From Stylophora pistillata (lineage: Eukaryota), in contig NW_019217949.1 in assembly GCF_002571385.2 (NCBI RefSeq), positions 320,151 to 384,150 of the forward strand: 64,000 nucleotides of DNA. Reading direction: 5' to 3'. Below, one piece after another: positions 23,273 through 42,347 of the stretch. The position numbers and the translations under genes are program-made. The notes below the pieces were generated by a model. It was not told the origin of the DNA, searched no databases, and saw only the letters and a program-made list of their open reading frames with translations. Position 1 is the stretch's first letter, and each line of letters starts with the position of its first letter.

Positions 23273-26200
23273 ATGAATATTTCTGTCTCAAATGGTAAGT
23301 TTTTACTGCAATTTTACTGTTATTGCATGTCTTATTCAAATTGTCCCCGATAAAGCTAGCACTGGGAAAATATACTAAGTCTTGGTGGTTTGACAAATTC
23401 CGAGCTGAGGAAGCTCTGTGCATGTAGACAGGCGTAACTTATTTATATTAAATTGACACTGTATTAGATAGTAAAACTTTGGCTTTTGTCCATTTTGAAA
23501 CAACAGTTGCTTTGTCAGATTTCCTTAGACAAGCTGAATTGTGAGGAAGGCAGTAAAATACAGGCAACAAAGTAAAAGTTAAGATCTTTTTAGCGTAGAG
23601 GAACCTTTCAAAGGAAATTTTCTAAATGCTTTCTGCGCTATTTGTTTCTCAGCAGTGCGCGGGAAATGAATATTTGTAACTTTTGTTTCTAATTCTGGAT
23701 AAATAATCGAGTCGAGGACTTCCTAAAGTCGAAAAAGGATGCAACAGCACTCAGCTTTCCCTAAAATTTCAAGGTATTCTAAAACTCTTTTCAGCAGTTC
23801 CGTCCAAAAAGTAAAAGTCCTCTGCAAATCTTAGGTCTTGTGCGTGATCAAACACTTCCGATTCAAAAAAGGTATTTTTTTAAGGTACATTTGATCGCCC
23901 GTGTAAACCAATATTTTTAGGCAAAAAGGCACAGAGTCGCCCCCAACTTGTCAGATTTATCCATTCGCACACATTTTCATTGAGTTCGGTGGTCTTATCA
24001 ATTCTCAACTACCGTAGAAGACATGACATCATTGCAAATCAGTATCAAAATCTATTCCCCATGGAATAATAAGTGAGAGATTAAACCCCTACGCAGTTTT
24101 ACTGAAGGCAACGGAAACGAAACCTGCGCCTCTCAGAGTCGGTTAGTGGGAGATCATAAGCTGATGACCCTGTATTAATTACAAATGTAAAGAAAATGAA
24201 GAAAAATAAATCAGTTTTTCATTGAAAGAAAACGAAGCAGTGATGAAGGAAAATAAAATAACGCCCTCGCGGATTTCACTGATTACAAGGGACATGGATA
24301 TTTCTGTCAAATTGATATGGATATTTATATGGATATTTCTGTCAAATTTTTACGGATAAAGATTAAGTGCTACGGCTCAGAATATTATCGACCCGCTCAA
24401 ATAAGAGTTAAAATGGCAACATGGAGTTTAACAAAAAGACGCAAGCGTTTCTATTTGGTATTGGTTGAAAACTATTATCAGTTATCCCATACGAAATACA
24501 ATAATCCTCTCTGCTGAGTAAATTGGCTTCAAGATGGTTTAAAAAGGTGAAACGTGCAATCCTTGGATGAAAACGCATGACATAGCACTTCTTCTTAAGA
24601 TTTCAGTTTTTAACTTCAAGCAACCGGAACACAATTGACCTGCAAGTTATAGACCTAATTGAAATGGTGTTAGGGAGCACACTAGCGCATGCGTTATTAA
24701 CTAAAAAGGACTAGTAAGAATAAATTGTAGCGTCCGAGAGAAAACGATTTTGAGGTACTATATACGAGCAGTGCAGGGAATAAATACGTATGCCCTTTAG
24801 ATATCAAATGTTCCTTTTCACCTCGGGCTCTTTTGAAATATCTTGGCGGGGGCATATAGAATGCTGTAAAGTTAGTGCAGTAATTTTTTATCATGAGTTT
24901 TTAACTTTTATTTTTAGAAAGCTTTTAATAGTAGAAAATCATGATTACCGTGACTTCAACTTTTGAGATGTCCTTCATATTCTTAGAGAGCAGGCGGTTT
25001 TTTCTCAGCAATTTGTCTTTGCATTTGCAAACAATCGAACAATCGTAGAGGAGTGATTTATGGAGGAACATATTTGTCAATACCCAGTGGTGCATTAAGT
25101 TTAATTTTTTTACCATATTTACTCTTCTGATCAGATTATGTTAAAGAAATTGCTAAAATTATCTTTTCTTTCAACATGTGGCCCGTAGCTCATTTGACAG
25201 TAGGACGGAACTAGATGGATAAATAGAGAGATATATAGATAAATAATTTTTTTTTTTAACTGAATCAGGATAGCTCATTCATCTGCGAGGCCGGTGTCGA
25301 GAGGATCCCTAATGTTTAAACTAACAAAATTGTCTCAAATATTAAAAATTTCATATAAAAACGACAAATATATTCCTAAAGTTTATTGCAATTGAAAAAA
25401 TTGCATGCAGTCCTATAGGAAAAAAATCTTAAAAAATGGAGGTTTTAAAAACTTGCAATTTTTAATTCAATTCTTAAAAAATCTGCAAGGACTCGGCTTG
25501 CACGAATTCGCTAAGTGACTCTGTTATTAACCTTGAATCATTATATCAATTTCCAGATTCATTTAATGACACTCAGGTTTGGCGGAATCATATTCCAGGA
25601 CAACCAACATATGCACACAAAGTTATAATGACCGTTGTCTACAGTACGATGTTCTTGTTGTCTTTAACCGGAAACTCCATGACGATCTACATTGTGTGGA
25701 GTAAACCTTACTTGCGATCCGTTACTAACTGCCTGATTGCTAACATGGCCGCAGCAGATCTCGTTACAACATTCAGCGCCATGCCCTATGCAGTCACCTA
25801 CGCCTTCATACAGACTCAATGGTTCGGAGGCATCTTGGGAACGGTCACGTGCAAATTGTTGATGTTTTTGTTTCCATTGTCCATTGCAGCTTCCATAATC
25901 TCTTTGGTGATAATTGGGTTGGACCGTTTTTTCGCTGTAGTTTACCCGTTCAATCGTCCCAAGGTAATCCGCAAGATTTCTGTGATGAGTGCGATCGTCT
26001 GGGCTTTGTCCATCCTATTCACATCACCCTATTTGTATGCTTACAAAATGCTATTAGGACGGGACAATAATTATCATTGCGTTCAGCTATGGGAATCGCC
26101 TATCACTGATCCAAAAAATGCGTCCCGAACCTATTTTGTTTTCATTCTCGTTTCTCTTTACTTGGTTCCGCTGCTACTTATCGCCATCTTTTACAGCATT

Positions 26201-26719
26201 GTTTCTTTGAAGCTCTGGGCACGCAGAATCCCAGGGAATCCAACAGCTGCAAACATCAGGCACGCGGAAGCGAGCAAGAAAAGAACTATTAAAATGCTCG
26301 TCATCATTGTTATCGTTTTTACCCTCTGCTGGCTTCCTGCGCATATCATTCACTTGTTGGCAAAATTCAATGAACGAATGTACTCTGCGATATCACCTAT
26401 AATAGTTCTGATAGCGATTGGCATATCACACCTGAATTCCACTATAAATCCCTATCTCTACGTAGCCCTGAACAAAAACTTCCGACGCGCCTATTTAGAT
26501 ATTCTTCACAGCTGGTTCAAACCCGCAGGAAGCTTAGTGCGTCCGTGGGGAAGCAACACCACCTCGAGCGCGTATCTGGCCGAGGGCATGTCTATGGAGT
26601 ACGTGAGTGTTGGAGATCTGGGGAGAAGAGAAAAATACGACTTGTCTAAAAGCGAGAGAAATCGGGACTCGTCGTTACGTGTCAGACAAGTAAGCCTTAT
26701 GAAAGTAAGGGAAAACTAG
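23273..26719 (+). CDS. Class A GPCR, neuropeptide-receptor-like (GPCR1), 2 coding exons, ~394 aa
   Basis: Exon 1 23273-23294 (MNISVSN, phase 1, GTAAG donor) joins exon 2 25557-26719. N-terminal N-glycosylation sequons, seven hydrophobic helices, GN, NMAAADL, TM3 Cys, DRF, CWLP, NPYLY. Confidence 0.93.
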
Positions 26720-27181
26720 TGAAACAAGAGCACTGCGGTCCTAACAGGGTCCAACAAGAAACACTGGTGGGCCACATGTACAGGCAAAGCCCGCTTAAGG
26801 AAGCCTATAACCTGTGAGGAAAGTAGGAAGACTTCAATGGAACATTCGGATTTGCATGAACTTAGAGTGCAATCTTCAGAGAGAAACATTTACAATGGAT
26901 AAGACTAATCTCATATTATTATAACTTTGAATGAACAGCTACTTTAATTTTCTTTATCGTAAGTAACAATCAAACCCATAATTAAAGAAGCCTTTTATCG
27001 GCCAGCTGTAATATACGTATGATGCACGATCCTCGCAGTAGAGAGGATCGTGCTGTAATATACTAGAACAACCTGTAATTACAAAAAGTTCTTTATTAAA
27101 TATCATTTACTGAAACATGCTTCCTCAACCAGAATCATAAGCCCGCGAAATTTCTCTTGAAGGTTGTTCTTTTCCACGAGA

Positions 27182-40340: not shown

Positions 40341-40848
40341 ATCTAGAAGTTAGTCTGTAGTATCTAAACATAGATTCAAACATAGATAAACATTCGCAAG
40401 AATTAGTGTGACAAGATTTAAGAACATTTCTCAAAATTACGCTCAGACTAAGTGCTAACTGGCCACAGTTTGAGAAGTTTTAGCTTTAAGATTCGTTTAG
40501 ACGATTTATTTACTGTTATCAGTTAATTAATCCATTCTTAAACGCGCGCATGGTGGAGGCATTTTTAGTATGTCTTAGCGGCCATCTTGGCAGCTATCTT
40601 GACAGCCATCCTTGCACTTATCTATTGGACCACTTTGGCAGCTATTTTGGAGGCTATCGTCTTTGAGGCTATGCTGTCGGAGGCGTCATACCCTTTACCT
40701 AATCGATCAAAAGTTACATTATTTACAGCTAAAGGTTCCAACGCAGATGTAGTGAAAACTCAGGGTTCCACTCACCCCACTTCTCTAATACATTTATGGG
40801 GGGAGGGGGAGGGGTAACTGGAACGTCCGTGTGTATTTCCGGTCATAG

Positions 40849-42347
40849 TCATCCTAGGTGCTCGTCACCAGGCTTGACAGGTGGGAGGAGTGGCGATGGG
40901 GCACGAGATATTTGAGTTTTCATTTGCGAAGTTAAAACTATATTTGTTCCTGCACTCCTTTTGATTGATAAGCTGGCCAATTTCTTGGTGACTGTCTCTT
41001 GACATCCTTTTCTGTACATTCCACTAAGAAATGCAACTAGTAAGGGATTGATGGCGCTGTGGGAGTGACACGCCCAGAAGGGCAAAAGTAAAGCCACATG
41101 AGGTAAATGTAATTCGGACCGAAAGTATGTCAGTAGATGTATGATGTGAACTGGCAGCCAAAACAATGTAAACGCTATCACCAAAATTATAAGCATTCTG
41201 ATGGTGTTCTTGTTATGGATTTCTCTCTTTAGAATGAGGTCTGGGGAACGTATTCCTGGTATTTTATGTCTCCATAGCTTTCGGCAGATGCACGTGTACA
41301 GTGTTGCAATGAACAGTAATGGAATCACATAGAGCATTACAAACACCAGGACATAATAAAACTCAAGAAAGTACAGATATTTAAGGCTCACATTGCATTG
41401 GCTCTCACCGTTTGGGAGCTTTAAACTTTCGTAAACAATCAGATATGGACTCATTAGAACAAGGGACGCAAACCAGGTCAATGCGTAGCTCGTTCTGATT
41501 TTCTTGAAGAACTCGACGCGTTTGAAAGGAAGTACAACGCAGATGAAACGGTCGATGGCGATCAGTACGTGTGTGAGAATAGATGCAGCGATTGACAATG
41601 TCAAGCCATATTGCACGACCTTGCAGGTAATATCACCGATCACCCCAGATAACCAAAGGTGCTGTAGGTACAAGTACATAACGGATGACGGCATGGCAAA
41701 AAAGGTGATAAGTAAGTCAGCCACAGCCATATTGGCCACCAATAGGTTCGTCGTGGTTCTGAGGCGAGGTGTCTTGTGTATGACGTAAATCATAAGAGCG
41801 TTTCCTACCAGGGAGACGATGAAGATAATGACATAGGCAAACGTCATGCCAATTTGAAGTTTCAGGGAAATTGGAGATTTTGGCAGGTCGCTGTCATTAC
41901 CAACGATTCCATTAGAACCTGGTAAAGAAACGGTTTATCTTTAACTATATATGTTTTTTTGTGGGATTTGGCAGATGCTGCATTCTGAAGAAAGGACTTC
42001 ATGATTGATTTCAAAGCTGCACTCAATAAAACAGACCGGTACAGCGGTAATTCGTTTCGTCTCCGTTTCTACAATGACTTACCATTTTCTTTTCTTAACG
42101 GCTCACTTCTTCGTTGCATTCCAAGTTAATATTCTCTCTCCTAAGTTGCTTTTGATGAATATTTTTTCTGTATTTTTCGAAGGCAGAGTAGTCATCATTA
42201 ATCCACTTAAAGTAATTTTGTACTACCAGAATTTAAAACGACATAGCTAGATCATAACATGTTACCATGGTTACTAACTTCCTAGCCTTTTTTTTTTGTT
42301 TCCTTAATTTCTAAATCATCAAACTTACCATTATGAAAAACGGCCAT
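40849..42347 (-). CDS. Class A GPCR, neuropeptide-receptor-like (GPCR2), 2 coding exons, ~362 aa
   Basis: Exon 1 42347-42329 (MAVFHN, phase 1, GTAAG donor) joins exon 2 41918-40849. Seven TM helices, GN, NMAVADL, TCK, DRF, KLW..KIPG, FWLP, NPLLV. Confidence 0.92.

What the first reader, a model, noticed from the sequence alone, without database searches (positions are those of the whole stretch)
23273..42347. Mirror-image block GPCR -> <- secreted A | secreted B -> <- GPCR: a candidate duplicated receptor-plus-secreted-partner module
Seen: four genes form a palindrome in order and orientation. The outer two are same-family GPCRs with the same layout (6-7-codon first exon, phase-1 intron, TM1 at an equivalent offset, shared KLW..IPG). 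The inner two are paralogous signal-peptide proteins with shared intron positions, starting head-to-head 2.1 kb apart. GPCR1 and A end 462 bp apart; B and GPCR2 would end about 1 kb apart without the satellite. Both pairs look comparably diverged by eye, and all four ORFs are intact. Inference: an ancient inverted duplication of a two-gene unit, retained possibly because the secreted protein is a ligand, co-receptor or modulator of its neighbouring GPCR. I know of no description of such a pairing.
Basis: partly seen in the sequence, partly recalled or inferred. Interest (0 to 1): 0.8.

Follow-up and report, generated by a model that had tools for sequence, protein, structure and literature searches.

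The report
Mirror-image GPCR and lectin gene block
In the coral Stylophora pistillata, two related orphan receptor genes flank two related secreted sugar-binding (AJLec-type lectin) genes in a mirror-image block also seen in other stony corals; nothing shows that the lectins act on the receptors.

Summary
The window is Stylophora pistillata. GPCR1 (+), A (-), B (+) and GPCR2 (-) are intact genes in a palindromic order. The N gap lies inside B's first intron, between repeat copies, and touches no coding sequence.

The "unnamed" secreted domain is the AJLec lectin fold (PDB 6A56, profile E 1e-46, TM 0.73-0.78). Both disulfides and the sugar-site Ca2+ ligands are kept. The family is cnidarian-only, has at least 70 copies here, and its S. 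pistillata homologues were noted in 2018. RNA contigs confirm all of A's splice junctions.

Pairing is conserved in stony corals. B and GPCR2 lie tail-to-tail on a contig of another robust coral. A and GPCR1 carry consecutive accessions in Porites. Coral gene order is generally well conserved, however, and I found no linkage in sea anemones. None of 112 GPCR paralogues shares a contig with any other AJLec copy. Trees allow, but do not prove, one ancient inverted duplication.

Verdict: a real, ordinary, old duplicated block. The ligand-receptor idea is unsupported. The scan noted A and B before on this same stretch (s1-789014).

The parts
23273..23294 (+). GPCR1 exon 1 (MNISVSN plus 1 base, phase-1 donor GTAAGT)
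   Evidence: matches the N-terminus of P0205 (XP_022791877, 'prolactin-releasing peptide receptor-like')
25557..26719 (+). GPCR1 exon 2: whole 7TM body, DRF and NPYLY motifs, stop at 26717-26719
   Evidence: RNA contigs cover 25600 to about 27040 in four runs
27182..27338 (-). Lectin A exon 4 (last; WYGEDL...DNQG Ca2+-site motif). The 3' UTR runs down to about 27017.
   Evidence: joint 27338/28944 seen in four RNA runs
27339..28943 (-). A intron 3, absent from B. It holds an (ACTG)n microsatellite at 27866-28493 and a MITE-like copy at about 27500-27660.
28944..29105 (-). Lectin A exon 3
30303..30447 (-). Lectin A exon 2. Its phase-2 donor at the R|C site is shared with B.
   Evidence: joint seen in three RNA runs
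31372..31423 (-). Lectin A exon 1 (signal peptide [17 protein letters not shown], phase-1 donor)
   Evidence: joint 30447/31372 seen in run X8; same N-terminus type in the Porites orthologue P0057
31424..33568 (.). 2.1-kb head-to-head spacer between the A and B start codons (possible shared promoter region; not tested)
   Evidence: coordinates
33569..33626 (+). Lectin B exon 1 (signal peptide MLLPFVLLGFVVPSFTQQL, phase-1 donor GTGAGT)
   Evidence: the model equals P0030
34232..34497 (.). Assembly gap, inside B intron 1, flanked by repeat copies; not filled
36123..36270 (+). Lectin B exon 2
36715..37039 (+). Lectin B exon 3 (last). It covers what A splits into exons 3 and 4.
37505..40301 (.). 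27-bp satellite, about 104 copies, between the B and GPCR2 3' ends
40849..41918 (-). GPCR2 exon 2: 7TM body, DRF motif, NPLLV in place of NPxxY
42329..42347 (-). GPCR2 exon 1 (MAVFHN plus 1 base, phase-1 donor GTAAGT)
   Evidence: matches P0204 (XP_022791914, 'trissin receptor-like')

Best explanation
This is a four-gene neighbourhood of Stylophora pistillata, shared at least in part with other stony corals. Two paralogous, orphan, peptide-receptor-like class-A GPCR genes (G1, G2) flank two paralogous genes for small secreted AJLec-type lectins (A, B), which should bind sugars with the help of Ca2+.

The mirror symmetry most likely records one ancient inverted duplication of a convergent GPCR-lectin pair. 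That event is older than the Complexa/Robusta split, and by the trees older than the coral/sea-anemone split. The block has since been kept by the slow gene-order change typical of stony corals, perhaps helped by abutting 3' ends (GPCR1/A) and a short head-to-head spacer (A/B).

Shown: the gene models, expression of GPCR1 and A, AJLec family membership, and pairwise adjacency in other corals.

Inferred: the single duplication event, passive retention, and that the lectins act on glycans (microbe or symbiont recognition) and not on the neighbouring receptors.
For: - Gene models; RNA joints.
- Lectin identity: Foldseek top hit 6a56_A (E 1.5e-11, TM 0.73/0.78, 32% id). Family profile against PDB gives 6a56 at E 1.1e-46 over residues 4-163 of 164.
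- The four Cys and the E/D/N Ca2+ ligands are conserved (with residues from PMC6070535).
- Duplication: the order and orientation are palindromic. G1 and G2 are sister clades in the ML tree (70/59).
- A and B share a phase-1 intern position after the signal peptide and a phase-2 R|C intron. All 20 other copies examined lack the R|C intron.
- Both splits predate anemone orthologues.
- Conservation: on locus L066 the G2 orthologue (+) and the B orthologue (-) lie tail-to-tail, 2.3 kb apart.
- Porites evermanni A = CAH3029135 and G1 = CAH3029136, on one 233-kb scaffold. P. lutea has XP_073241668/669 and XP_073241671. Oculina has XP_078357783-788 and XP_078357791.
- Background: high gene-order conservation among corals but not with anemones (PMC6214176).
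- Against a general module: no contig other than this one is shared by 70 AJLec hits and the 112 best GPCR paralogues. No GPCR lies within about 20 kb of the closest AJLec paralogues, and no AJLec lies near the closest GPCR paralogue.
Against: - A and B are not sisters in the ML tree. B plus its Oculina orthologue groups with Nematostella and Actinia sequences (92/93). A plus its Porites orthologue groups nearer the C195 and C299 lineages.
- The AU test of an A+B clade gives p = 0.064.
- G1/G2 sisterhood is weakly supported, and a paralogue on contig C103 scores as high against both receptors.
- Given two plus two adjacent genes, a palindromic order and orientation arises by chance about 1 time in 12.
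- Full four-gene synteny was not seen in any single other genome.
- Retention over about 400 My could also reflect selection.
Confidence: 0.55

Rival explanations
1. Functional module: each secreted lectin is a ligand, co-receptor or modulator of its neighbouring GPCR. It might act, for example, by binding N-glycans on the short receptor N-terminus or by presenting a glycan-bearing ligand. The pairs are then kept together by selection.
For: Cognate pairs (A with G1, B with G2) remain adjacent in both Complexa and Robusta corals. All four genes are intact, and GPCR1 and A are both present in polyA RNA-seq of three studies. Both receptor N-termini carry N-x-S/T sequons.
Against: - The secreted proteins belong to a glycan-binding lectin family with a conserved Ca2+ sugar site.
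- The receptors have roughly 30-residue N-termini and look like small-peptide receptors. All 31 deorphanised Nematostella class-A receptors respond to short peptides (PMC11087051).
- No other AJLec/GPCR adjacency was found in this genome.
- Anemone relatives are unlinked, and no Nematostella G1/G2 orthologue appeared although B-like lectins are present there.
- Coral-wide synteny explains retention without selection.
Confidence: 0.07
2. Independent origins: the lectin pair arose by its own local head-to-head duplication, and the GPCR pair by a separate duplication or rearrangement. The mirror image is then a coincidence of two clustered, tandemly expanding families.
For: - Both families form many tandem clusters here (AJLec on contigs C299, C282, C418, C419, C766, C29 and C184; GPCRs on C127, C86, C59, C8 and C84).
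- A and B are not sisters in the ML tree.
- G1/G2 sisterhood is weak.
- The palindromic pattern has about a 1/12 chance given the four genes.
Against: - The R|C intron is shared only by A and B.
- Both duplications are of comparable, pre-scleractinian depth.
- This is the only place in the genome where the two families meet, so two independent duplications would have to hit the same spot symmetrically.
Confidence: 0.3
3. Regulatory entanglement keeps the block together. Overlapping or abutting convergent 3' UTRs (GPCR1/A) and a shared bidirectional promoter (A/B) make breakpoints deleterious, without any protein-level interaction.
For: RNA contigs of GPCR1 run to about 27040 and those of A start at about 27017, so the 462-bp spacer is fully transcribed. 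The A and B start codons are only 2.1 kb apart.
Against: Contigs cannot show strand or true transcript ends, and they break at a short high-copy element. B and GPCR2 are separated by a 2.8-kb satellite here and by 2.3 kb in L066, so no overlap is needed there.
Confidence: 0.08

Closest known systems
AJLec, the galactose-specific Ca2+-dependent lectin of the sea anemone Anthopleura japonica (PDB 6A56; Unno et al. 2018, PMC6070535)
   Same: Whole-domain homology (profile E 1.1e-46), a small jelly-roll beta-sandwich (TM 0.73-0.78), both intrachain disulfides, the Ca2+ ligands Glu141/Asp150/Asn151, a signal peptide, a size of about 150 aa, and restriction to cnidarians. The paper already reports 29 S. 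pistillata homologues.
   Different: The galactose contact Arg64 and the interchain Cys3/Cys122 are absent, so sugar specificity and dimer mode may differ. The B lineage has an extra Cys in WCGEDL. Second-Ca2+-site residues are kept in B but not in A. No binding data exist for A or B.
Cnidarian peptide-receptor-like class-A GPCR expansions (Thiel et al. 2024, PMC11087051)
   Same: 7tm_1 fold, short N-terminus, DRF motif, and inconsistent automatic names (PrRP, trissin, NPFF, QRFP, RYamide, allatostatin-A, tachykinin receptor-like). This naming pattern is typical of lineage-specific cnidarian receptors without bilaterian orthologues.
   Different: G1 and G2 are orphan. The whole G2 clade replaces NPxxY by NPLLV. 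No orthologue among the deorphanised Nematostella receptors was identified here.
Inverted segmental duplications and conserved microsyntenic blocks in scleractinian genomes (Ying et al. 2018, PMC6214176)
   Same: Gene order is kept across the Complexa/Robusta split (about 415 My) but not in sea anemones.
   Different: This block pairs two unrelated families in a mirror image. I know of no description of this particular block.

Membership tests
AJLec-type lectin family | Sequence homology to AJLec over the whole domain | tested here: met
   profile of 30 family members (B first) against PDB gives 6a56_A at E 1.1e-46, covering residues 4-163 of 164. A is 44% identical to B over 168 columns.
AJLec-type lectin family | Small jelly-roll beta-sandwich fold like 6A56 | tested here: met
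   the AF2 model of B has pLDDT 85 and pTM 0.80. The Foldseek top hit is 6a56_A (E 1.5e-11, TM 0.73/0.78); the next hit is at E 5e-3.
AJLec-type lectin family | Two intrachain disulfides (Cys15-Cys156, Cys48-Cys61) | tested here: met
   four invariant Cys (B C35, C70, C82, C168). They align to AJLec C15, C48, C61 and C156 and are present in A.
AJLec-type lectin family | Side-chain ligands of the sugar-site Ca2+ (Glu141, Asp150, Asn151) | tested here: met
   The E of W[YC]GEDL and the DN of DNQG are present in A and B and align to AJLec E141, D150 and N151.
AJLec-type lectin family | Galactose-contacting Arg64 and the aromatic cradle | tested here: not met
   The loop after WGC is shortened in A (WGCDKDNG--F) and B (WGCHSGS----K), with no Arg at the aligned place. 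The AJLec paper also finds these residues only partly conserved in homologues. This bears on specificity, not on family membership.
AJLec-type lectin family | Disulfide-linked dimer through Cys3 and Cys122 | tested here: not met
   A and B have no Cys at the aligned positions. The B lineage has a different extra Cys (C151).
AJLec-type lectin family | Ca2+-dependent carbohydrate binding | not testable with these tools
   Needs recombinant protein, a glycan array or a haemagglutination assay.
Class-A (rhodopsin-type) GPCR | 7tm_1 domain over seven helices | tested here: met
   PF00001 at E 9e-47 (G1) and 1.4e-45 (G2), covering the full profile.
Class-A (rhodopsin-type) GPCR | D/E-R-Y/F motif at TM3 and NPxxY motif at TM7 | tested here: inconclusive
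   DRF is present in both receptors. G1 has NPYLY. G2 and all 12 of its orthologues that reach TM7 have NP[LI]LV, lacking the Tyr.
Ligand-receptor gene pair (secreted ligand encoded next to its GPCR) | Recurrent linkage of the two families beyond one locus | tested here: not met
   the only shared contig is this one, and the nearest paralogues of either family have no partner nearby.
Ligand-receptor gene pair (secreted ligand encoded next to its GPCR) | Physical binding or receptor activation | not tested
   Complex prediction was not sent because neighbourhood was the only reason to expect binding. Wet assays are needed.

The most novel reading that the evidence does not exclude
The two AJLec-type lectins are dedicated extracellular partners of the flanking orphan GPCRs. 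A glycan-sensing subunit (microbe or symbiont sugar) would pass its signal to a class-A receptor. The pair would have duplicated as a unit and been kept together for more than 400 My. G2's conserved loss of the NPxxY tyrosine would then mark a specialised, perhaps non-canonical, signalling arm.
Probability: 0.05. Interest if true: 0.8.

Novelty: new member of a known kind. Interest (0 to 1): 0.3.

Why it matters
The result gives the two "hidden" secreted genes a name and a testable biochemical function: Ca2+-dependent lectins of a cnidarian-only family.

It documents an old, conserved GPCR-lectin-lectin-GPCR block in stony corals.

It also removes most of the support for a new ligand-receptor pairing. 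If the small remaining chance of coupling were real, it would link glycan recognition, which matters for symbiont and pathogen sensing in corals, to GPCR signalling. As it stands, this is an ordinary ancient segmental duplication in a genome with slow gene-order change.

Tried and rejected
- Pfam on the secreted domain, as pieces and as whole single-exon paralogues, gave no family. The UniRef label "CUB domain-containing protein" has no support here.
Direct microsynteny in named coral genomes could not be read, so I used accession order, shared contig lengths and one metagenome contig instead.
The enrichment test therefore rests on contig lists and six fully scanned neighbourhoods.
- The careful mixture-model GPCR tree did not finish. 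It was replaced by an LG+G4 tree with more taxa.
- The AU test of {A,B} alone (p = 0.0006) is uninformative, because each has a closer orthologue in another species. The proper four-row test gave p = 0.064.
- The 10 kb upstream of G2 on L066 shares no coding match with the window's right flank. This neither supports nor refutes wider synteny.
- Flanking window ORFs gave only a Ras-family fragment.
- The large HMMER search was not used, because family identity was settled without it.
- The spliced A protein has no reference. It was joined only inside scripts from /data/window.fa for alignment and trees, and was never sent to a search tool. Searches used single exons, B's database id (P0030) or orthologue ids.
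- The N gap was not filled or looked up.

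
Full report
**What is there**

The window is scaffold C166:320151-384150 of Stylophora pistillata. B's spliced model translates exactly to NCBI XP_022791917 (P0030).

Two class-A GPCR genes lie at the outside of the block. GPCR1 runs on the + strand, with exon 1 at 23273-23294 and exon 2 at 25557-26719. 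GPCR2 runs on the - strand, with exon 1 at 42347-42329 and exon 2 at 41918-40849. Both hit Pfam 7tm_1 over the full profile and are 40% identical. They correspond to XP_022791877 ("prolactin-releasing peptide receptor-like", 394 aa) and XP_022791914 ("trissin receptor-like", 362 aa). A 5' intron before the N-terminal segment is, however, common among the paralogues.

Between the receptors lie two small signal-peptide genes. B runs on the + strand, with exons 33569-33626, 36123-36270 and 36715-37039. A runs on the - strand, with exons 31423-31372, 30447-30303, 29105-28944 and 27338-27182, giving 171 aa. A and B are 44% identical. They share a phase-1 intron after the signal peptide and a phase-2 intron at the R|C site. 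A has a third, 1,605-bp intron, full of (ACTG)n and a MITE-like copy, that B lacks.

**The gap**

The N run at 34232-34497 lies inside B's intron 1 (33627-36122). Its flanks are copies of a repeat that recurs at 35095-35187 and 35694-35741, so the gap most likely reflects repeat collapse. No exon is affected.

The exon 1 to exon 2 join is the NCBI model. Orthologues in Pocillopora, Oculina and Orbicella have the same N-terminus. In another coral's contig, exon 1 lies about 750 bp upstream of exon 2.

**Expression**

PolyA RNA-seq contigs from four runs of three studies were laid on 25600-31500.
- They cover the GPCR1 exon continuously to about 27040.
- They show the A joints 27338/28944 (four runs), 29105/30303 (three runs) and 30447/31372 (one run), all with GT..AG on the minus strand.
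- A's contigs begin at about 27017, so the 462-bp spacer between the two stop codons is fully transcribed.

Contigs cannot give strand or true ends, and they break at a short high-copy element, so overlap of the 3' UTRs is possible but not shown.

**What the secreted proteins are**

Pfam has no model for the domain. It has at least 70 copies in this genome and homologues in Nematostella, Actinia, Exaiptasia and many corals, all "uncharacterised".

An AF2 model of B, built from a 30-sequence alignment, has pLDDT 85 and pTM 0.80. It matches one PDB entry far above all others: 6A56, AJLec of Anthopleura japonica (E 1.5e-11, TM 0.73/0.78, 32% identity). The family profile hits the same chain at E 1.1e-46 over residues 4-163 of 164.

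AJLec is a Ca2+-dependent, galactose-specific lectin of a fold family found only in sea anemones and corals. Its authors already listed 29 S. pistillata homologues (PMC6070535; review PMC10377782).

Comparison of A and B with AJLec:
- Both keep the four disulfide cysteines.
- Both keep the Ca2+ ligands: the E of W[YC]GEDL and the DN of DNQG.
- Both lack Arg64 and the interchain Cys3 and Cys122.

I therefore file A and B as AJLec-family lectins of unknown sugar specificity.

**Is it a duplicated unit?**

In favour:
- The order and orientation are palindromic.
- The G1 and G2 clades are sisters in the ML tree of 62 receptors, though only at 70/59 support.
- Among 22 AJLec copies examined here, only A and B have the R|C intron.
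- Both splits are old. The G1 clade contains Exaiptasia and Actinia orthologues to the exclusion of G2 (100/98). B plus Oculina groups with Nematostella and Actinia sequences to the exclusion of A (92/93).

Against:
- A plus Porites sits nearer the C195 and C299 lineages than B does.
- Forcing {A, Porites, B, Oculina} into one clade costs 17 lnL units (AU p = 0.064). This is disfavoured but not rejected.
- A paralogue on C103 scores as well as GPCR2 against GPCR1, and as well as GPCR1 against GPCR2.

I put a single inverted duplication at about one half, and independent local duplications at about 0.3.

**Is the linkage conserved?**

Direct evidence comes from one JGI coral-metagenome contig, Ga0126339_10000114 (locus L066). 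It carries a G2 orthologue (61% identity) and a B orthologue (82% to B, 97% to Oculina's) tail-to-tail, 2.3 kb apart.

Indirect evidence:
- Porites evermanni A (CAH3029135) and G1 (CAH3029136) have consecutive accessions on one 233-kb scaffold.
- Porites lutea has G1 as XP_073241668/669 and A as XP_073241671 on one chromosome.
- Oculina has G2-like XP_078357783-788 and B as XP_078357791 on one chromosome.
- Montipora foliosa has G1 as XP_068712000 and G2 as XP_068712002/003.
- Desmophyllum has consecutive locus tags OS493_031028 to OS493_031030 for G2-like and G1 proteins.
- G1- and G2-type proteins share a 30,872-bp ENA contig.

In sea anemones, the G1-type receptors and all AJLec members retrieved lie on different scaffolds. 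No Nematostella G1/G2 orthologue appeared, although four Nematostella AJLec genes of this subfamily did. These searches were not exhaustive.

This pattern, conserved in corals but not in anemones, is exactly the genome-wide background reported by Ying et al. 2018 (PMC6214176). It therefore does not by itself indicate selection.

**Is there a receptor-partner module?**

Within this genome, the 70 AJLec hits and the 112 best paralogues of GPCR1 share no contig other than this one. The same holds for the 20 GPCR2 hits listed.

I scanned up to about 20 kb on each side of the closest AJLec paralogues (C195, C299 up to its contig end, C4) and of the closest GPCR paralogue (C103). None had a partner. 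A wider fetch was blocked.

The receptors have short N-termini typical of small-peptide receptors. All cnidarian class-A receptors deorphanised so far respond to short peptides (PMC11087051). The secreted proteins are lectins.

I therefore rate the ligand, co-receptor or modulator reading at about 0.07. Complex prediction was not sent, because neighbourhood was the only reason for expecting binding.

**Verdict**

The interpretation as an old inverted duplication is plausible. The functional pairing is unsupported, and the "undescribed" domain is a known lectin family.

Handling of the spliced A model: it was joined only inside scripts and was never sent to a search tool.

Noticed in passing
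window 40849-41918 (-), and G2 orthologues P0062, P0091, P0108, P0184, P0134, P0114, P0119, P0120, P0124, P0130, P0135: The whole G2 receptor clade has NP[LI]LV in place of the TM7 NPxxY motif (Tyr7.53 replaced by Val) in complex and robust corals. It also sits on a long stem branch (0.70). The G1 clade keeps NPxxY, except Porites (NPYLN). This suggests altered activation or coupling.
   Followed up: partly
window 36715-37039 (+), residue C151 of P0030: The B lineage (Stylophora, Pocillopora, Oculina, Orbicella) has WCGEDL where all other AJLec-family members have WYGEDL. This is an extra, unpaired Cys two residues before the Ca2+-binding Glu. It could form an intermolecular disulfide, replacing AJLec's Cys3/Cys122 dimer link.
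   Followed up: no
window 37505-40301: A 27-bp satellite of about 104 copies lies between the B and GPCR2 3' ends. Its unit is itself palindromic (AGTGGCC...GGCCACT). The orthologous spacer on L066 is only 2.3 kb in total.
   Followed up: partly
window 35201-35650, about 27500-27660 and 27013-27045: A MITE-like element has 141-nt inverted arms (98% complementary), with another copy inside A's intron 3. These and a short element at 27013-27045 reach word depths of thousands to hundreds of thousands in RNA-seq contigs, so they are very high-copy and transcribed somewhere in the genome.
   Followed up: no
G000:C418:279962, C1762:10929, C766:108545: Some AJLec-domain hits are reported inside very long open frames (3229, 1202 and 1139 aa). 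The two of these fetched, the C418 and C1762 loci (L011, L012), are long only because of withheld N stretches. Multi-domain AJLec proteins were not confirmed here. One Actinia protein (P0047) does combine fn3 with AJLec.
   Followed up: partly
G000:C4:1749683-1749841 (L047): This is a partial copy, 88% identical to residues 52-109 of the C195 AJLec paralogue. It is a likely gene fragment or pseudogene.
   Followed up: no
window 2976-3380 (-): An ORF fragment has a Ras-family hit (PF00071, E 4e-12). It is probably an exon of a small GTPase gene on the left flank.
   Followed up: no
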